A DNA stretch of 64,000 bases from NCBI GenBank assembly GCA_977020255.1, contig CDROCS010000410.1:434001-498000 (forward strand), read 5' to 3'. Below the pieces are notes generated by a model. That model had not been told where the DNA came from. It ran no database searches and saw nothing but the letters and a program-made list of their open reading frames with translations. Shown here one piece after another: positions 17,708-25,776 of this stretch (its first letter is position 1; every line of letters begins with the position of its first letter). This DNA is from Obrimoposthia wandeli (Eukaryota). The position numbers were made by a program, and so were the translations under genes.

Positions 17708-18139
17708 TTATAACTTCATGTGTAAAATCGGAAATGGCTTACCCATATCATCAAGCGGTGAGCGTGATACCACGTTAAACCCCATATGCTGATAAAAACC
17801 AACAGCTAACGGATTTTGTTCGTTTACATCAACGCTATTTACGTTCAATACACCAATGGCATATTCTAGCAGCAACTTACCAACGCCTTGCCCTCTCGCT
17901 TTATCAGCGATAAACAGCATTTCAACTTTCGCACTGTGGACTCCCACAAAGCCAATAATTGCACCGTTTGCATCTTTGATACACTTCAAGGTAACCGCTG
18001 GAAAAGCCTGCTCAATGATAATAGGCTTAAAAAAAGCGATATCTTCTTCACTAATGAAGTCATGAGTTGCTCGGACTGAGTTTTCCCAAACATCTAACAT
18101 TTCAGCATAATTGTCAGGAAAAACATTTTCTACAATCAT
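17708..18139 (-). CDS. GNAT acetyltransferase (YjaB-like)
   Basis: WENSVRATHDFI, LFIADKARGQGVGKLL, VDVNEQN..AVGFY. Confidence 0.9.
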   Translation of the reverse strand: MIVENVFPDNYAEMLDVWENSVRATHDFISEEDIAFFKPIIIEQAFPAVTLKCIKDANGAIIGFVGVHSAKVEMLFIADKARGQGVGKLLLEYAIGVLNVNSVDVNEQNPLAVGFYQHMGFNVVSRSPLDDMGKPFPILHMKL

Positions 18140-18317
18140 AATTATCTCACTTAAGTTTTTTGCTTAAATACTTTCTGATTACAGCGCAACCGCGACAGCA
18201 CATCATAGCAAAAAAAGTCTCTGGAGTAGACCTAAAACGAAAGGTACCCATCAACCACGCTATTTTGTACACTATCAGTCTATTAGAATTAGTTAACCTA
18301 TTTAAATTAATGAGTCA

Positions 18318-19355
18318 GTGATGAGTATACCTACAGACGTTTTACAAGCCGTTGCTAAGGCCATGGCTGCAGAGCATGTTGTCAGCACCCAGTTAATCCA
18401 ACCATTATGGGGAGGATACGGCGAGCTGTTTCGTGCCACATTGAGCGGTAGTCAGTATACTTCAGTCATTGTTAAACACATTAAACTCCCCCAACCAAAA
18501 GTTCATCCTCGCGGTTGGAATACGTCACTCTCTCATCAACGAAAGTTAACATCATATCAAGTAGAACTGCATTGGTATCAGCATTACGCCAATAGCTGTC
18601 TACCGCAATGCCCTGTGCCTAAATGTCTGTATGTTAACGAACAAGACGATGAGATATTACTGATCATGGAAGACTTAGCGACGCTAGGATTTACACAGAC
18701 ATTCACCAGCTTTGAACCTAAATCAATTCCATATAAACAAACTTCAAATAAGCAGTCGCATGATAAAAAAATAGAATCTTGCTTGTCTTGGTTGGCTTAT
18801 TTCCATGCTCAGCACCTTGCTATTGAACCCGATGGTCTGTGGGAATGTGGCAGCTACTGGCACCTGGCGACTCGCCCTGACGAACTAACAAAACTAACCG
18901 ACATACCATTGCAGCAAGCAGCTAAGCAAATAGATAACGCATTACAGCAATGCCCGTTTCAAACCCTTATTCATGGCGATGCGAAGTTGGCTAATTTCTG
19001 CTTCACTGCAACAGGCGATCGCGTGGCGGGTGTTGATTTTCAATATGTCGGTAAAGGCTGCGGCATGAAAGATGTGATCTTGTTGTTCAGTAGCTATATA
19101 CCACATCAACAGTGCGATCAAGATGTACCTGAGCTGCTCAATTATTACTTTAGTAAATTACAACAAGCGCTATCCGAGCTACAACCAGATATCAACCCGC
19201 AAGCTGTGGAAGATGCATGGCGACCACTTTATTGCATCGCTTGGGCTGATTTCCAACGTTTCATGAAAGGCTGGAGTCCGACGCACTGGAAGATCAACAA
19301 CTACACTGAAGCGTTGACTAAGCAGGCTCTGGCACAGTTAAAACAGTACCGTTAA
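18318..19355 (+). CDS. APH/choline-kinase-like phosphotransferase (ecdysteroid kinase/DUF1679-like)
   Basis: IHGDAKLANF (Brenner motif), VDFQYVGKGCGMKD, SYQVELHWY. Confidence 0.85.
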   Translation: MMSIPTDVLQAVAKAMAAEHVVSTQLIQPLWGGYGELFRATLSGSQYTSVIVKHIKLPQPKVHPRGWNTSLSHQRKLTSYQVELHWYQHYANSCLPQCPVPKCLYVNEQDDEILLIMEDLATLGFTQTFTSFEPKSIPYKQTSNKQSHDKKIESCLSWLAYFHAQHLAIEPDGLWECGSYWHLATRPDELTKLTDIPLQQAAKQIDNALQQCPFQTLIHGDAKLANFCFTATGDRVAGVDFQYVGKGCGMKDVILLFSSYIPHQQCDQDVPELLNYYFSKLQQALSELQPDINPQAVEDAWRPLYCIAWADFQRFMKGWSPTHWKINNYTEALTKQALAQLKQYR

Positions 19356-19422
19356 AACTGCCAGTTAAAATAGTACAGTCAAAAATGCCATTAAATTAAT
19401 CCGATAAAGGTCTATCAACACA

Positions 19423-20343
19423 ATGAAACTAAGCGCTTGTCAGTTAGAACAACTATTACAACTCGCCTCCGATGCGGCATTAAAAGCAGGCGACTTCATC
19501 AATAGCGTGGATAGATCTTCACTGCAGGTACAGAGTAAACAAGCCGGTTCGAGCTTAAGCGCACAAGTCGTCACGCAAGTAGATTTGGATAGCCAAGCTA
19601 TTATATTAACGATACTAGAACCAACTATCGCACAATATGATATTGCCTTGTTGACTGAAGAAAATGCCAGCGAAGAAGATGTCGCCACTCACGCCCGTTT
19701 TCATAAAGACTATTTCTGGTGTATAGACCCACTCGATGGCACCCTGCCCTTTATTGAAGGTGGTGATGGCTTTGCCGTATCTATCGCGTTGGTGGACATT
19801 ACAGGTAAACCGATTATTGGTGTGGTTTATAACCCAAGTACCAATGATCTTTATCAGGCCATTAATGCCCAACCACTGCTATCAAGCGTAATGAAGAATG
19901 GATTACCTTGGCAGCCGGAGAAAAATAATTCGCTATTAAGCTTGTATATAGATCGCAGCTTCCAGCAAGACGCTCGTTACCCAGCAGTGCTTGAACAATT
20001 AACAACACAGGCTGTGCAACAAGGATTGAAATTACAGGTCATCAAAAATAGTGGTGCTGTCATGAATGCGATTGGCGTACTCGAAAATCCACCAGCTTGT
20101 TATGTTAAGTTACCTAAACCACAACTCGGCGGCGGTAGCTTATGGGATTTCAGTGCCACAGCCGCGATCACCGATGCACTGTCTCATCAGTATTTTACCT
20201 CATCTTCAGAAGTGTTATGCAGCGTCAGTGATTACCAAGGCGCACCTTTAGATCTTAACCGCGTGGACTCTAATTACATGAATCACAGAGGTGTGTTATA
20301 TCGCTGTGGGATGAGTGCTCGAATTTTGTCTAAGGAGATGTAA
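19423..20343 (+). CDS. Inositol monophosphatase / CysQ-family phosphatase
   Basis: LLTEE, WCIDPLDGT, SLWDFSATAA motifs. Confidence 0.88.
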   Translation: MKLSACQLEQLLQLASDAALKAGDFINSVDRSSLQVQSKQAGSSLSAQVVTQVDLDSQAIILTILEPTIAQYDIALLTEENASEEDVATHARFHKDYFWCIDPLDGTLPFIEGGDGFAVSIALVDITGKPIIGVVYNPSTNDLYQAINAQPLLSSVMKNGLPWQPEKNNSLLSLYIDRSFQQDARYPAVLEQLTTQAVQQGLKLQVIKNSGAVMNAIGVLENPPACYVKLPKPQLGGGSLWDFSATAAITDALSHQYFTSSSEVLCSVSDYQGAPLDLNRVDSNYMNHRGVLYRCGMSARILSKEM

Positions 20344-20365
20344 TGAACGTACTAGAAAAAAAGGT

Positions 20366-20400
20366 AAAAAAAGAGGAAGCTGAAGAACTTCCTCTTTCTT
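20366..20400. terminator. Bidirectional intrinsic terminator
   Basis: AAAGAGGAAG (20370-20379) / CTTCCTCTTT (20388-20397), A-tract on the left and T-rich on the right. Confidence 0.8.
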
Positions 20401-20600
20401 AATACAGGACGTGAGGATCACTGTAATATTCTTTATATGGAGAGAGGGCTCCCCATATTTTTAACACTAACTATTAATATATTAGCTAGCATCTTTTGCA
20501 TTGTCATCCAAAGGAGCATTAGCCTACTCTTCTGGATTTAAGTCTGCACGTGAGAGCTGTTTAGAATACTCTGTTACGCTTTGAGTGGTATTCTAATGAA
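20366..20600 (-). ncRNA. Candidate TorR-regulated small RNA
   Basis: Tandem tor boxes upstream, 5' hairpin, anti-SD motifs, U-tailed terminator, no long ORF; purely predicted. Confidence 0.35.
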
Positions 20601-20625
20601 ATATTAAGAATGACATTAGCGTGTA

Positions 20626-20646
20626 ATGTGAATGGAATATGAACAG
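20626..20646 (-). promoter_or_regulatory. Tandem TorR boxes
   Basis: Minus strand CTGTTCATAT (20646-20637, exact tor-box consensus) then CCATTCACAT 11 nt later. Confidence 0.65.
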
Positions 20647-20757
20647 ATAATTAAGCGCCACCTACATTTACAAAGAAGCGCGTGAAAAATCGTTAAACAA
20701 ATTTCACATTAACATTTATAAACAACAACTTAAAATCAAACCATATTGTTTTAGGTA

Positions 20758-23691
20758 TTATTCCCGCTCAGAAAGTTGCTGCATATAATGTTGTAATTGG
20801 CAGGTAGAATCGTGAATTAATAAATCTAATGCGATTAATTCTGACTCAGATAACGCTGTAGTCTTACAAGATAGTTCAAGTTGCTGACAAAGTGTGTACA
20901 ACGCAGTTAATCCCAACCCGACAGCCGCACCTTTTAATTTATGCAGTAACTGTTCTTGCTGCTCTGCATCCAATGCAGCAAAGTCACTGTAATCCGATAA
21001 CGTCTGCTCACAAAATAGCTGACCCAACGCAATGATCTTATCTTTCCCTAAATATTGCAGGTCTTGCTCGAGTGTTGACGTGTCCAATAATGGAAAGCCT
21101 AATAATGGAGAGTCTAACAATGCAGAGCCTAGCCCCCTCTCATCATCAACAACCGCCGCAGATGGTTCATACTCATCGATACACACGACATTCGCCATTA
21201 CCTTATAGATAGCTCCTTTCAGGCGTTTCATTTGGACTGGTTTCGCAATAAAACCATCAAAGCCTGAATCAATGAACTTAGTAATATCGTCTTTAAATAC
21301 ATGAGCAGATACCGCAATGGTTTTTAATTGTCGCTGCTTACATTCGGCCATGTCTCGTAACTGTGCAGCCAGTACTACGCCATCAATATCCGGCAGGTTA
21401 ATATCCAACAAGGCTAAATCAACATCCTGATTCTCATACAGCTTAAGTGCTGAAGCACCATCACAAGCGGTATAAACATCATGACCTAGTTTTTTAACCA
21501 GTTCATATGCAACATCTCGATTAATTAGATTGTCTTCAACAATAAGAATGCGAAAGCGGTTTGTTGTCTCGACCACGGTTGACACGATTGCTAACTGTTC
21601 GTCAATCAAGCCTTGTGGTGCAGCTTCTAATGGCATAGTAAAGTAGAAACAACTCCCCTGCGCCTCAATACTGGTTAACGATAACGTTCCTTGAATAGCG
21701 GATACTAAGCGTCGACTAATAGCGAGCCCTAACCCAGTCCCAGCTGCGCAACTTGGGTTCTTGACTTGCGCAAAGGCTTCGAATATCTCTTCCTGTTTAT
21801 CTTGTGCAATACCACATCCGGTATCATGGATACTAAAACGAAGTTGCCCCTCTTCTTCAGCAATCACAAGTGAAACACTGCCTGAATGGGTAAATTTAAT
21901 CGCATTACTCACCAGGTTAAGAATAATTTGACGCAGTTTACCTAAGTCAGCAAGCACCCAAGTATCTCGTACAACATCAAGTTCAAAGGTTAACTGCAAG
22001 CCTTTGCTTTCCGCCCTCGCACGCATCAGTTCAATGACATTATGACCTAGGCTATCGAGGTTAACGGCACGTTTAGATACCTCAATATGACCGGCCTCAA
22101 TTTTAGAATAATCAAGAATATCATTGAGAATATCTAACAGGTCTTCACCCGATGTCAGAATTGTTTGCGTATACGCCTGTTGCTTGGTCGACAGCGAGGT
22201 ATCAGAGAGCAGTTCCAATGTCCCCAGCATACCACTCATGGGCGTTCGGATTTCGTGACTCATGTTCGCGAGGAATACCGACTTGGCATTATTAGCATCT
22301 TCCGCTTGTTTCTTGGCGACAGCATGACCAATGGATTCGCTATTCAGCTTCTTGTTAATCTGCATTAACTGCTCTGTTCTTTGCTTGACGAGCAACTCTA
22401 GGTTTTCTTTATGTAGGCGTAACTCTTTTTCAATTTTGATTTGCTCTTGTTCGAGCTTTTGCTTTTTCAGTGCATTGTCACGAAAGACATCCAACGCTAA
22501 TGCCATTTGTTTTAGCTCTAAATCATCCGACGGTTCGACATTAATTTCGAGATCGCCCTCAGCCAGCTTTTTAATCACTTGGGTATGCTTCGATAATTTA
22601 AATACAATACCTTGATATACAATTTTCCACATCACGCCAATGATCACAATTAATGACAGCAAGGTAACGAAAATAAGGATACGCTGCGACCAAGCAACCA
22701 ACTTTTGATGCTGCTGGCTAGTCTGCTGTGCTTGCAGCGTTTGTTCATCAACAAGGACGCGGATACCTTGGTTCAGTTCACTGAGTTGCGTGGAAATATA
22801 CAGGTGTAAAAGGTTCTGTTTTTCTTCTAATATGAGGTACTCACGTTGCTGAATAATCAGTACGTTAAAGGAATTCAAGCTTACTATTGCAGATTGAACC
22901 AACTCTAAACGGTAAGGGTCTTCGATTGAATCCACCAGCTGATTGATGATGTATAAGAGTTCATCTTTTTGCTGCGTTAATATAATAAGTTGAGTAGGCT
23001 GCGAAGTATTGATGATCAAGTTCGCAATTTTTCCCAGTTGTAAGCTGTACCTTTCCAAGGCGGTCATTTTATCTAATAAATTAAGATCTTCGTCAATAAC
23101 AAGATCTATGTCCTGATAGATAATAGCTTTATCAGTGTCCTGTTCAATTAAGTCATAAAGCCCACCGAGCCTCACTAGCGTAAAGGTACTTGCGTTAGCG
23201 ACTTGAGATTGTGACAATTGGAAAATATTATGTACACCCTCTGTGACCTGTTGAAACAATACTTGGCGTTGCTGTTTACCCTTAATTTGTAGCTTAGCAT
23301 TGTCATTTAGCTGGCGAATATTGTTAATAATACTTATTTTTTGGGCGACTAAGTGACGTACATTATTGCTGGCGAATTCAGATATATCAAAAGCCTGAAA
23401 CTTTTTACCAATGGCGCTATTTAACTGAGTCAGTTCAGCATTAATTTGTTGGCGTTCGGCATCATTCGAGGCATTTTTGAGCACGGTTGTACGGTTAGTT
23501 ATTTGTAAACTTATATTTGCTAACTCACGTGCGCTTGATAAAGTTGGTAAGGTTTGTTGGGTGATCTGCTTACCCGTATCAGCAATAAGGCTTAAACTAT
23601 ACCAAGACACAGTGCTGATAATAACCAATAAGCTGGCAACAAAGCTAAACGCAAACAATAGTTTGTTCCCAATACTTTGACGAAATCGCAC
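20758..23691 (-). CDS. torS: TMAO hybrid sensor kinase TorS
   Basis: Two TMs with periplasmic domain, HAMP, H-box [14 protein letters not shown], receiver LLDINLPD, HPt LHKLKGAA; next to torT/torR. Confidence 0.92.
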
Positions 23692-23812
23692 GGTAATCTC
23701 CTATGACTATTTTTAGTATTATTAAAATCGTAATCACAACAAGTACAAAAATAGCGTCGGTGATAGACTACGGCAACGAGCAAATATAACTTATCGACTG
23801 GTATCATTTATT

Positions 23813-24880
23813 GTGAAATATATTATTAAATCTTTGTTTTTATTCATGACGTTACTGTTCATTACATTACGATTCAGCTTACCCGCGTGGGCAACAGATA
23901 ACGAGCCATTAGATGCTATTCCGCCTCAAAGCATTACTCAAGATATTGCTCAAAATATGATTCAAGGTAAGCTGCGACTTTGTGCCGTCTATCCCCACCT
24001 TAAAGACTCATACTGGCTAAGTATCAATTTTGGCATGACTGAGCGTGCAAAACAAAGAGGTATATCATTAAAAGTGCTGGAAGCAGGTGGTTATCAAAAT
24101 AGTCACGAGCAATGGGCACAAATTCAACAATGCCTGACGTGGCAAGCCGATGCGATATTAGTCGGTGCCGTTTACTATGATCAACTCAGTGCCAAACTCA
24201 CCACACTCAACAAAACAGTGCCTTTGTTTGGTCTAGTCAATGAAATATCCACACCGAATCTCACCGCTAGTACAGGCATTTCTTGGTACAAGATGGGGGA
24301 AGAACTCGGACATTACTTGAGTCGTAAACACCCAAAAACAGCCAACAACACCAAGTTAAAACTAGCTTGGCTTCCCGGCCCTAAATCGGGTGGTGGCAGC
24401 GAGCAAGCAACATTAGGACTAAAAAATGCATTGAAAGACAGCGACGTTGAGATCGTCTCCATTAAATACGGCCTTAATAACAAGATGCATCAGTTTTCAC
24501 TCATTAACGAAACCCTCGCTGAATTTTCAGACGGTGAACTCGACTATCTTGCGGGAAACGCGATAATGGCTGAGATGGCAATCAATGAACTGGGAAAATT
24601 AGAACAAGACAAGCGTCCGCAAATTGTCAGTCATTACCTCAGTCACGGTGTGTATCGAGGTATCAAACGTGGCAAGATCCTAATGGCCAATTCAGATCAG
24701 ATGGTATTACAAGGCGCGATGGCGATAGATCAAGCTGTTGACTACTTATTAAATAAACCCTATGTATTGCATCAAGGGCCTGAAATACTCACAGTCACCC
24801 AAGATTTGTTGTCCGAATTTCCGACAGCACAATCGTTATCACCGAGTAATTTTAAACCTATTTATTCTGTGACACCTTAA
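23813..24880 (+). CDS. torT: Periplasmic TMAO-binding protein TorT
   Basis: LCAVYPHLKDSYWLSINFGM, LEAGGY, SHYLSHGVYRG. Confidence 0.93.
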   Translation: MKYIIKSLFLFMTLLFITLRFSLPAWATDNEPLDAIPPQSITQDIAQNMIQGKLRLCAVYPHLKDSYWLSINFGMTERAKQRGISLKVLEAGGYQNSHEQWAQIQQCLTWQADAILVGAVYYDQLSAKLTTLNKTVPLFGLVNEISTPNLTASTGISWYKMGEELGHYLSRKHPKTANNTKLKLAWLPGPKSGGGSEQATLGLKNALKDSDVEIVSIKYGLNNKMHQFSLINETLAEFSDGELDYLAGNAIMAEMAINELGKLEQDKRPQIVSHYLSHGVYRGIKRGKILMANSDQMVLQGAMAIDQAVDYLLNKPYVLHQGPEILTVTQDLLSEFPTAQSLSPSNFKPIYSVTP

Positions 24881-24904
24881 GTTAATGGGCTTTTATGACT
24901 GCTT

Positions 24905-25636
24905 TTATGACAGCTCTGCTGCAAATAAATAACCTTCGCCATGCACGGTAACAAAATAGGCTGGGTTTTTAGGGTCCGATTCTATTTTGTTACGCAAGCG
25001 ACGTACTAATACATCTATCGTGCGATCATTCGGTGCTTCAACCCGATGGTTGATTAAATTAAGTAATCGATCTCGAGATAAAACTCGTTCAGGATGTGTA
25101 ATGAAAGCCACCAGCATTTCAAATTCAGCTTTGGTTAACTTAACCTGCTCACCGAATCGGCACAGCTTGCGTTTAGCTATGTCAAAAGTACAGTCACCAA
25201 AATGAAATAGTTCATCATTTTCGGCGCTTTTAATCGCATGTGCTAATTCATTGTTTGCTTGAGTTGTTAACGAAATACGCCACAGTAAATTCTTTACTCG
25301 TACTAACAACTCACGAAATTCAAATGGCTTGGTGACATAGTCATCTGCGCCCATTTCTAGACCGACAATTCTATCAATCGCATCTGTGCGTCCAGTCACT
25401 AAGATAATACCGATATTTGATTGGCTACGCAGCGTCCGAGTGATCATCAAGCCATCTTCATCGGGCAAGTTAATATCGAGCATCACAAGATCGATGTGAT
25501 GATTATTGAGTACGATATTCATTTCGGCCTTACTCGCAGCCTCACTCACTTGGTAACCCTCATGCTGAAAGTAACCAACAAGCTTAGCACGGGTTATTGC
25601 TTCGTCCTCAACAACCAGAATATGCTTATTTTTCAA
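24905..25636 (-). CDS. torR: Response regulator TorR
   Basis: HILVVEDE, LDINLPDEDG, DRIVGLEMGADDY, winged-helix RTIDVLVRRLR. Confidence 0.92.
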   Translation of the reverse strand: MKNKHILVVEDEAITRAKLVGYFQHEGYQVSEAASKAEMNIVLNNHHIDLVMLDINLPDEDGLMITRTLRSQSNIGIILVTGRTDAIDRIVGLEMGADDYVTKPFEFRELLVRVKNLLWRISLTTQANNELAHAIKSAENDELFHFGDCTFDIAKRKLCRFGEQVKLTKAEFEMLVAFITHPERVLSRDRLLNLINHRVEAPNDRTIDVLVRRLRNKIESDPKNPAYFVTVHGEGYLFAAELS

Positions 25637-25776
25637 ATTAAATTCCTTAACAACTCTCTACTAGCTAGCGAAATGACAATAGAGCATTAATCGCCAACTT
25701 TTGCAATTGATGTTAGCTAGAGCCGTTTATAAAAAGCGCTAATTGCCCACGTTAGGAGTTAAGTTGAATAAGTATT

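What the first reader, a model, noticed from the sequence alone, without database searches (positions are those of the whole stretch)
20366..20646. Candidate TorR-activated small RNA downstream of torS
Seen: an exact tor box CTGTTCATAT (20646-20637, minus strand) with a second box CCATTCACAT at 11-nt periodicity, a -10-like TAATAT (20606-20601) and a hairpin TTAGAATAC/GTATTCTAA (20561-20596). The minus strand then carries several anti-Shine-Dalgarno-like tracts (CUCCUU at 20516-20511, CUCUCUCC at 20446-20439, CCUCAC at 20416-20411) and ends in a U-tailed terminator (20397-20366). No long ORF lies there; only a 28-codon ORF (20519-20433, MLLWMTMQKMLANILIVSVKNMGSPLSI). Established: TorR activates promoters through CTGTTCATAT direct repeats. 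Inference: a TMAO-responsive base-pairing sRNA or small protein encoded at the tor regulatory locus. I know of no described equivalent.
Basis: partly seen in the sequence, partly recalled or inferred. Interest (0 to 1): 0.75.

Follow-up and report, generated by a model that had tools for sequence, protein, structure and literature searches.

The report
Reductase deletion scar kept as TorR-driven RNA
The stretch after torS is what remains of a deleted TMAO-type reductase gene (its TorR-controlled promoter joined to its tail and terminator), and because it changes far more slowly than its surroundings it is probably still used as a small TMAO-responsive regulatory RNA, though no expression data prove that.

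Summary
The window comes from a Moritella close to M. marina.

**What it is.** In sister Moritella (sp. 5, PE36 and others), a homologous tor-box promoter after torS drives an 883-aa Tat-exported S/N-oxide reductase. Here a deletion of about 2.6 kb removed that gene. It joined the promoter plus about 35 nt of leader (20646 to ~20563) to the last ~76 nt of the coding sequence, the full 3'UTR and the terminator (~20557 to 20366).

**Why it is not a dead relic.**
- From tor box 1 to the terminator it is 99.3% identical to M. marina. torS third codon positions are 88.6% identical and the adjacent spacer 78.6%.
- The same pattern holds for sp. F3 and sp. 24.
- The former 3'UTR forms three hairpins supported by compensatory changes in 13 sequences. 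One carries a nearly invariant CCUCAC loop.
- No small ORF is conserved, and Rfam has no match.

**Reading.** The best explanation is a TorR-driven non-coding RNA of about 230 nt born from an mRNA, as proposed for OxyS. This scan's notes held no earlier look-alike.

**Limits.** RNA evidence was uninformative: only low-depth, unstranded metatranscriptome contigs. Function and targets are inferred. The anatomy is about 0.95 certain and a functional RNA about 0.55.

The parts
20758..23691 (-). torS, intact hybrid sensor kinase (977 aa). No terminator-like site lies between its stop and the element.
   Evidence: NCBIfam TIGR02956 scores 1012 bits against a cut-off of 676. The terminator scan is.
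20647..20757 (-). Fast-evolving spacer between the torS stop and tor box 1. It serves as an internal near-neutral control.
   Evidence: Identity to the window is 89.2% (L016), 78.6% (M. marina), 59.5% (sp. F3) and 53.8% (sp. 24), with indels.
20637..20646 (-). Tor box 1, CTGTTCATAT, an exact match to the enterobacterial consensus.
   Evidence: The TTCATA core is invariant across the scar clade. Consensus as quoted in PMC9239176.
20626..20635 (-). Tor box 2, CCATTCACAT, 11 nt after box 1. It would sit at about -41 to -32 of the predicted start.
   Evidence: Its distance to the -10 element (19 nt) is the same as for the last box in sp. 24, and in the reductase-bearing loci except L001, which has a 10-nt insertion there.
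20597..20620 (-). Conserved promoter core, including the -10 hexamer TAATAT (20606-20601).
   Evidence: Nearly identical in most of the scar-type and reductase-type loci aligned; L001 departs most just upstream of the -10.
20563..20594 (-). Remnant of the reductase mRNA leader. The predicted transcription start is near 20594 (inferred, not mapped).
   Evidence: Aligns with the leader of L017, L003 and L001. 79.5% identical in sp. F3 and deleted in sp. 24.
20556..20565 (-). Deletion junction (about 20560 +/- 5) where the leader meets the 3' end of the coding sequence. A short ATT(A)C-like microhomology lies there.
   Evidence: Local alignments to the L017 leader and to the L017 coding 3' end.
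20482..20557 (-). Pseudogene fragment: about the last 25 codons of the reductase (its TorC-like haem domain), with an in-frame stop and a frameshift. The ancestral stop position is 20484-20482.
   Evidence: Aligns with L017:10720-10823 and with the L003 3' end. Domain assignment.
20435..20458 (-). 3'UTR hairpin 1: a 10-bp stem with a CCCU loop. The CUCUCUCC tract largely forms its paired 3' arm.
   Evidence: Helix 1: 92% of cells paired, 4 pairs with changes on both sides. MFE fold.
20403..20425 (-). 3'UTR hairpin 2 with the CCUCAC loop (20416-20411), the most likely seed.
   Evidence: Helix 2: 93% paired, 3 pairs with changes on both sides. The loop is identical in 12 of 13 sequences and UCUCAC in one.
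20362..20397 (-). Rho-independent terminator (stem 20397-20387 with 20380-20370) plus U tail. This is the predicted 3' end of the RNA.
   Evidence: helix 3. 97-100% identical across the scar clade.
19423..20343 (+). Convergent inositol-monophosphatase/CysQ-like gene. It marks the far side of the deleted segment.
   Evidence: In L017 the reductase gene and a cytochrome b561-like gene lie between torS and this gene.

Best explanation
**Shown.**
- The element is the scar of a deletion of about 2.6 kb. The deletion removed a TorR-activated, Tat-exported S/N-oxide (TMAO-type) reductase gene that lies directly after torS in sister Moritella.
- What remains is that gene's promoter (two tor boxes and a -10 element) and about 35 nt of leader. 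These are fused to the last ~76 nt of coding sequence, the complete 3'UTR of about 85 nt (two hairpins) and the terminator.
- The whole unit, from box 1 to the terminator, is under purifying selection in at least five Moritella lineages. No ORF in it is conserved.

**Inferred.**
- TMAO sensed by TorT/TorS phosphorylates TorR. TorR binds the two boxes, which overlap the -35 position, and starts transcription near 20594.
- Transcription ends at the terminator, giving a non-coding RNA of about 230 nt (about 150 nt in sp. 24).
- Its working part is the former 3'UTR. The single-stranded CCUCAC loop most likely pairs with Shine-Dalgarno-like GUGAGG sequences of target mRNAs, with help from Hfq or ProQ.
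- The RNA thereby stays in the TorR regulon after its parent protein was lost. Read-through from torS may also feed it.
For: **Synteny.**
- L017, L003 and L001, and as far as their contigs reach L101, L070 and L064, have torR-torT-torS, then tor boxes, then an 883-aa reductase. In L017 a cytochrome b561-like gene and the cysQ-like gene follow.
- The window, L016 and L012 (M. marina) go from torS straight to the cysQ-like gene.

**Homology of both halves.**
- Promoter and leader align with the reductase promoter.
- 20557-20366 aligns with the reductase 3' end and 3'UTR.

**Selection.** Percent identity to the window:

| Locus | Element 20366-20646 | torS 3rd positions | cysQ-like 3rd positions | Spacer |
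|---|---|---|---|---|
| L016 | 98.9 | 92.7 | 92.8 | 89.2 |
| M. marina | 99.3 | 88.6 | 79.7 | 78.6 |
| sp. F3 | 91.1 | 83.0 | 73.5 | 59.5 |
| sp. 24 | 3'UTR 92, terminator 97 | 70.1 | 61.8 | 53.8 |

- Conservation begins a few bases before box 1 and ends at the U tail.
- In sp. F3 the hexamer cores TTCATA and TTCACA and the -10 element stay unchanged while the bases between them change.

**Structure.**
- The 235-nt fold has a z-score of -6.8.
- The three 3' hairpins are 92.4% paired, against 42-54% for the slid controls. Eight pairs changed on both sides.

**Single copy.** The covariance model finds one copy in the window and one per tor locus, and none elsewhere.

**No coding signal and no known family.**

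**Precedent.** OxyS arose from the last ~65 nt of a peroxidase coding sequence plus its 3'UTR and terminator, and kept OxyR control (PMC8825220).
Against: - **No transcript evidence.** Four metatranscriptome runs were available only as low-depth, unstranded contigs. They cover torS, the gap and the cysQ-like gene alike.
- **Nothing measured.** The transcription start, TorR binding and TMAO induction are untested.
- **No target.** Only 64 kb of the genome is visible, and the duplex scan was uninformative.
- **Terminator function may explain part of the conservation.** A second, independent scar (L019/L020) lost the promoter yet keeps hairpin 2 and the terminator almost unchanged.
- **The ancestral 3'UTR is not clearly constrained overall.** In reductase-bearing species the whole downstream stretch is no more conserved than third codon positions; only the hairpins are.
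- **Possible leader role in two species.** In sp. F3 and sp. 24 further ORFs follow the terminator on the same strand.
- **Weaker U tail in relatives.** The tail is interrupted by C in M. marina, sp. F3 and sp. 24.
Confidence: 0.55

Rival explanations
1. Inert relic. The promoter and gene tail were simply left behind by the deletion and do nothing. Their similarity between species reflects a young deletion, a local mutational cold spot, or recent recombination.
For: - The locus is a deletion scar.
- This reductase gene was lost repeatedly, and the region after torS turns over fast: L019/L020, L021/L022, L018 and L002 all differ.
- No expression is shown.
Against: - The element evolves several-fold to about 30-fold more slowly than the adjacent spacer, and more slowly than third codon positions, in four independent comparisons.
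- The boundaries of conservation coincide with box 1 and the terminator.
- A recombination tract would have to match those limits three times.
- Changes in the stems are compensatory.
Confidence: 0.22
2. A cis-acting DNA or RNA element only. The hairpins and terminator end torS transcription and shield the convergent cysQ-like gene. The tor boxes persist as a TorR binding (titration) site or as an insulated promoter without a trans-acting product.
For: - No terminator lies between the torS stop and the element.
- The promoterless scar in L019 keeps hairpin 2 and the terminator almost unchanged, ahead of a same-strand gene.
Against: - A terminator role does not explain conservation of the box cores, the -10 element, hairpin 1 and the coding remnant in the window, L016, M. 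marina and sp. F3.
- An invariant six-base loop is not needed for termination.
Confidence: 0.15
3. A TorR-controlled leader or attenuator for downstream genes. The promoter's real cargo is the 156-aa secreted protein and 89-aa membrane protein seen after the terminator in sp. F3 and sp. 24. The window has lost that cargo.
For: Same-strand ORFs follow the element in L013/L014 (both ORFs) and in L015 (the 156-aa ORF).
Against: - The window, L016 and M. marina have no same-strand ORF after the terminator. Only 22 nt separate it from the convergent gene's stop.
- Those three nevertheless show the strongest conservation.
- The terminator is strong, with 15 pairs.
Confidence: 0.05
4. A small protein. 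Candidates are the 28-codon minus-strand ORF, the 34-codon hydrophobic plus-strand ORF, or a 17-codon plus-strand ORF.
For: - All three ORFs exist in the window, L016 and M. marina.
- The 17-codon ORF is open in all five scar-clade sequences.
Against: - The 28-codon ORF is frameshifted to 12 codons in sp. F3 and deleted in sp. 24.
- The 34-codon ORF stops after 8 codons in sp. F3.
- The 17-codon ORF starts with GTG, has no usable Shine-Dalgarno sequence, lies beyond a terminator hairpin, and its stop is not conserved in sp. F3.
Confidence: 0.03

Closest known systems
OxyS and its origin from a peroxidase mRNA (Krieger et al. 2022, PMC8825220)
   Same: - A regulator-controlled protein gene next to its regulator was replaced by a small RNA gene.
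- That RNA gene consists of the last tens of nucleotides of coding sequence, the 3'UTR and the intrinsic terminator.
- It is still driven by the ancestral regulator-dependent promoter, so the RNA stays in the parental regulon.
   Different: - The regulon is TorR/TMAO, not OxyR/peroxide.
- Ancestral and derived states coexist within one genus, and the junction is still readable.
- A piece of the 5' leader is retained.
- The structured 3'UTR already exists in the intact gene.
- OxyS is experimentally proven; this RNA is not.
3'UTR-derived sRNAs of two-component or respiratory regulons (CpxQ from cpxP, NarS from narK; review PMC9438474)
   Same: - The regulatory RNA is the 3'UTR plus terminator of an mRNA.
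- That mRNA is induced by a response regulator or by anaerobic respiration, so the RNA forms the non-coding arm of the same response.
- In reductase-bearing Moritella the same three hairpins sit in the reductase 3'UTR.
   Different: - Here the parental ORF is gone, so the RNA would be a primary transcript and would not need RNase E processing.
- There is no evidence yet that the 3' fragment accumulates in reductase-bearing species.
- There, only the hairpins are conserved above the synonymous rate, not the whole UTR.
E. coli/Salmonella torCAD promoter with tor boxes
   Same: - Decameric CTGTTCATAT-type direct repeats.
- The proximal box overlaps the -35 position relative to a recognisable -10 element.
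- Intact torS, torT and torR genes lie alongside.
   Different: - There are two adjacent boxes rather than four; sister Moritella have three or four.
- The promoter lies downstream of torS rather than divergent from torR.
- It no longer drives any protein gene.

Membership tests
TorR-dependent (tor box) promoter | Direct repeats of the decamer CTGTTCATAT at a spacing of about 10-11 bp. | tested here: met
   One exact box and one 7-of-10 box, 11 nt apart. The core hexamers are conserved in relatives while the bases between them vary. Consensus as quoted in PMC9239176.
TorR-dependent (tor box) promoter | Drives a TMAO-type reductase gene and sits beside torS/torT/torR. | tested here: met
   This holds for the homologous promoter in six sister loci (883-aa BisC/TorA-family reductase). 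In the window the reductase gene itself is deleted.
TorR-dependent (tor box) promoter | TorR-P binding and TMAO induction. | not testable with these tools
   Needs a footprint or EMSA, and a reporter or Northern blot with and without TMAO in wild type and a torR mutant.
Trans-acting base-pairing sRNA (Hfq/ProQ type) | A discrete, abundant small transcript with defined 5' and 3' ends. | tested here: inconclusive
   Only unstranded, low-depth metatranscriptome contigs were available. One covers 20306-20532 and one covers 20612-20762. No ends or strand can be read.
Trans-acting base-pairing sRNA (Hfq/ProQ type) | A Rho-independent terminator with a U tail at the 3' end. | tested here: met
   15-pair stem followed by a U7 tract. 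The stem is supported by one pair changed on both sides. The tail is interrupted by C in three relatives.
Trans-acting base-pairing sRNA (Hfq/ProQ type) | A conserved single-stranded seed and no conserved ORF. | tested here: met
   The CCUCAC loop is identical in 12 of 13 sequences. All small ORFs are broken in at least one relative or lack translation signals.
Trans-acting base-pairing sRNA (Hfq/ProQ type) | Identified target mRNAs with complementary sites. | tested here: inconclusive
   Only 64 kb of the genome is available. The duplexfold scan of window start regions gave no meaningful ranking.
Gene-remnant-derived sRNA (OxyS model) | The locus is occupied by a protein gene in relatives, and the RNA aligns with that gene's 3' end, 3'UTR and terminator. 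| tested here: met
   The definition is taken from PMC8825220.
Gene-remnant-derived sRNA (OxyS model) | The ancestral regulator-binding promoter is retained. | tested here: met
   The promoter core and proximal box are homologous to, and spaced like, those of the intact gene.
Neutral pseudogene or deletion relic | Decays at about the neutral rate after inactivation. | tested here: not met
   The element has 0.7-12% differences, against 7-38% at third codon positions and 11-46% in the adjacent spacer.
Any Rfam family | A covariance-model match. | tested here: not met
   Only three chance-level snoRNA-type matches below their gathering scores in 19000-22000, at E-values up to 10.

The most novel reading that the evidence does not exclude
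A small-RNA gene caught shortly after its birth. Excision of the ORF fused a TorR-dependent promoter to the structured 3'UTR of its own reductase mRNA. That would create the first known TMAO/TorR-regulon sRNA, one that selection has kept after the enzyme was lost. Ancestral, derived, further-trimmed (sp. 24) and promoterless (L019) states all still exist within one genus and its close relatives, so the steps of sRNA origin could be tested directly.
Probability: 0.4. Interest if true: 0.75.

Novelty: new member of a known kind. Interest (0 to 1): 0.6.

Why it matters
How new bacterial small RNAs arise and join existing regulons is largely unknown. OxyS is the one worked example, and it was inferred across whole families of bacteria.

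In Moritella the intact gene, a clean promoter-to-3'UTR fusion, a shorter derivative and a promoterless scar coexist in close relatives. The fusion is under clear purifying selection.

If the RNA is expressed under TMAO, it would:
- add a non-coding arm to the TorS/TorT/TorR system, for which the literature searches here found none;
- show that a 3'UTR element can outlive its protein;
- offer a tractable natural series for testing sRNA birth.

If it is not expressed, the unusual conservation of a promoter with nothing to drive still needs an explanation.

Tried and rejected
- **Small proteins.** The 28-codon minus-strand ORF, the 34-codon hydrophobic plus-strand ORF (briefly considered as a type I toxin) and a 17-codon plus-strand ORF were rejected from the comparison across relatives.
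- **Known RNA family.** Rfam gives nothing.
- **Repeated or mobile terminator element.** The covariance model finds one copy in the window and one per tor locus. It finds nothing in about 390 kb of other DNA.
It is not conserved, and the 235-nt MFE fold does not form it.
- **Target prediction.** RNA.duplexfold against window start regions produced long non-specific duplexes and no usable ranking.
- **Expression.** The single run search and single read-laying run gave only Logan contigs, so strand, ends and level are unreadable.
- **Metagenome pattern search.** The degenerate pattern mostly returned chance hits. Only L041, L064, L070, L101 and L123 were real, and L123 is the same contig as L019.
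- **Earlier notes.** Searches of the scan's notes by sequence were blank, which per the operators means nothing.
- **Second reductase copy.** Whether this organism has one elsewhere could not be determined.

Full report
**1. Observation**

- Tor box CTGTTCATAT lies at 20646-20637 on the minus strand. A second box, CCATTCACAT, lies at 20635-20626.
- TAATAT lies at 20606-20601.
- The 9-bp hairpin arms are at 20596-20588 and 20569-20561.
- The three C/U-rich tracts and the 28-codon ORF are as described.
- A 15-pair minus-strand terminator at 20400-20367 is followed by a U tract.

The neighbours are intact torS, torT and torR, all above NCBIfam's curated cut-offs. A convergent inositol-phosphatase/CysQ-like gene ends at 20343.

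Box statistics alone are not significant: 5 near-matches against 6.2 expected, and 2 two-box matches against 2.7 expected. The site is validated by homology, described below.

**2. Organism**

The best TorS relatives are Moritella: two unnamed proteins at 97%, M. marina at 93%, sp. F3 at 90% and sp. 24 at 87%. The whole neighbourhood is syntenic with an M. marina contig. Two earlier notes call other pieces of this assembly Photobacterium. That label does not fit this window.

**3. What relatives carry at this spot**

- **Reductase present.** In Moritella sp. 5 (L017), PE36 (L003) and DT_65 (L001), torS is followed on the same strand by three or four tor boxes. Three metagenome contigs (L101, L070, L064) show the same boxes and reductase gene as far as they reach.
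  - After the boxes come a conserved -10 region, a leader of about 100 nt and an 883-aa Tat-signal molybdoenzyme. This enzyme belongs to the BisC/TorA S/N-oxide reductase family and carries a C-terminal TorC-like haem domain.
  - In L017 a cytochrome b561-like gene and the same cysQ-like gene follow.
- **Reductase absent.** The window, L016 and M. marina lack the reductase and cytochrome b genes. torS is separated from the cysQ-like gene by only about 400 nt.
- **Extra ORFs.** sp. F3 and sp. 24 have the same short element, followed by one or two unannotated ORFs.

**4. Anatomy of the scar**

- The window's minus strand from 20646 to about 20563 aligns with the reductase promoter and the first part of its leader.
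- From about 20557 to 20366 it aligns with the last ~25 codons of the reductase, its stop, its 3'UTR and its terminator.
- The junction is at about 20560, at a short microhomology.
- The coding remnant has an in-frame stop and a frameshift.
- The reductase was lost more than once.
  - L019/L020 carry a different scar: no promoter, a piece of the 5' coding sequence, then the 3' end and 3'UTR.
  - L021/L022 have lost everything.
  - L018 and L002 have other genes at this position.

**5. It is not decaying**

Percent identity to the window:

| Locus | Element 20366-20646 | torS 3rd positions | cysQ-like 3rd positions | Spacer 20647-20757 |
|---|---|---|---|---|
| L016 | 98.9 | 92.7 | 92.8 | 89.2 |
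| M. marina | 99.3 (2 differences in 281 nt) | 88.6 | 79.7 | 78.6, plus a 12-nt indel |
| sp. F3 | 91.1 | 83.0 | 73.5 | 59.5 |
| sp. 24 | 3'UTR 92, terminator 97 | 70.1 | 61.8 | 53.8 |

- Conservation starts a few bases before box 1 and stops at the U tail.
- In sp. F3 the TTCATA and TTCACA cores and the -10 region are unchanged, while bases between them differ.
- sp. 24 keeps three boxes, the -10 element and the 3' 140 nt. It lacks 79 nt of leader and coding remnant. The indispensable parts are therefore the promoter and the former 3'UTR.

**6. Structure**

- The predicted 235-nt RNA folds with a z-score of -6.8.
- Thirteen sequences were aligned: six scar-type, six reductase-type and one second scar (A6). 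In this alignment the 3'UTR forms three helices:
  - hairpin 1 (20458-20435);
  - hairpin 2 (20425-20403), with loop CCUCAC at 20416-20411;
  - the terminator.
- 92.4% of cells are paired, against 42-54% when partners are slid. Eight pairs changed on both sides. The covariation score is 0.23, against 0.05-0.09 for the slid controls.
- Many of these changes separate just two clades, so the number of independent events is small.
- A covariance model finds exactly one copy in the window (113 bits) and one per tor locus, and nothing elsewhere. Rfam has no match.

**7. Coding potential**

- The 28-codon ORF becomes 12 codons in sp. F3 and is largely deleted in sp. 24.
- The 34-codon plus-strand ORF stops after 8 codons in sp. 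F3.
- A 17-codon plus-strand ORF stays open but lacks translation signals and a conserved stop.

**8. Expression**

- Runs holding the stretch include marine and fish metatranscriptomes, but all are served as contigs.
- They lie at low depth on torS, the gap and the cysQ-like gene alike. No strand or ends can be read.
- This neither supports nor refutes a small transcript.

**9. Interpretation**

The anatomy (deletion scar) is secure. The most economical reading of a promoter-to-terminator unit under purifying selection without an ORF is an RNA gene.

Steps that are inferred rather than shown:
- TorR-P activates transcription from the two boxes. They would sit at about -52 to -32 of a start near 20594.
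- The terminator defines the 3' end.
- The CCUCAC loop acts as a seed on GUGAGG-like ribosome-binding sites.

Rivals:
- **Inert relic.** It fits poorly with the substitution rates.
- **Terminator or insulator plus a TorR site.** It explains hairpin 2 and the terminator, which also survive in the promoterless L019 scar. It does not explain the promoter and hairpin 1.
- **Leader for downstream ORFs.** It is possible only in sp. F3 and sp. 24.
- **Small protein.** Rejected.

**10. Comparison with what is known**

- The origin mirrors OxyS, which derives from the last ~65 nt of a peroxidase coding sequence, ~25 nt of 3'UTR and the terminator, and kept OxyR control (PMC8825220).
- Functionally it would resemble CpxQ or NarS, 3'UTR RNAs that form the non-coding arm of a two-component or respiratory response (PMC9438474).
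- No paper found here links TorR or TMAO respiration to a small RNA.

**11. Verdict**

It is a leftover promoter after a deletion, but one that selection keeps together with the gene's 3'UTR.
- It is best filed as a candidate new member of the gene-remnant-derived sRNA kind.
- Interest is 0.6, pending a simple Northern blot or dRNA-seq with TMAO.

Noticed in passing
L017:8172-10823; also L003:9157-11808, L001, L101, L070, L064: The reductase after torS in sister Moritella is a single 883-aa chain. It has a Tat signal, a BisC/TorA-family molybdopterin domain and a C-terminal ~60-aa match to the last haem domain of TorC. Its own tor boxes show it is TorR-controlled.
   Followed up: partly
L019:7464-7809 (same in L020); L021:6312-6373: There is a second, independent deletion scar of the same reductase gene. 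It has no promoter and keeps a piece of the 5' coding sequence joined to the 3' end and 3'UTR, with hairpin 1 eroded. In L021/L022 the whole region is gone. The segment after torS is a hotspot of gene loss and replacement.
   Followed up: partly
L014:8426-9198 and L015:8428-8898: In Moritella sp. F3 and sp. 24 a 156-aa protein that looks secreted from its N-terminus follows the element's terminator on the same strand. In sp. F3 an 89-aa hydrophobic, membrane-like protein follows as well. Neither has any NCBIfam hit. They could be read-through cargo of the TorR promoter.
   Followed up: no
window 19915-20426 (run X5, record 25): A fish metatranscriptome contig matches the cysQ-like gene, the terminator and hairpin 2 at about 97%. 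It then continues with unrelated sequence from 20426 on. This suggests yet another arrangement of the locus in a fish-associated relative.
   Followed up: no
window 18000-25700 versus L012, L016: Earlier notes label other pieces of this assembly Photobacterium. This window is syntenic with Moritella contigs, at 89-98% nucleotide identity in the genes compared. Either the assembly holds more than one organism or the earlier genus label is wrong.
   Followed up: partly
window 20625-20746 (run X3, record 18): One contig of a run whose RNA status is only guessed joins 20546 to 20625 on opposite strands. It is most likely an assembly artefact at the promoter-proximal inverted repeat.
   Followed up: no
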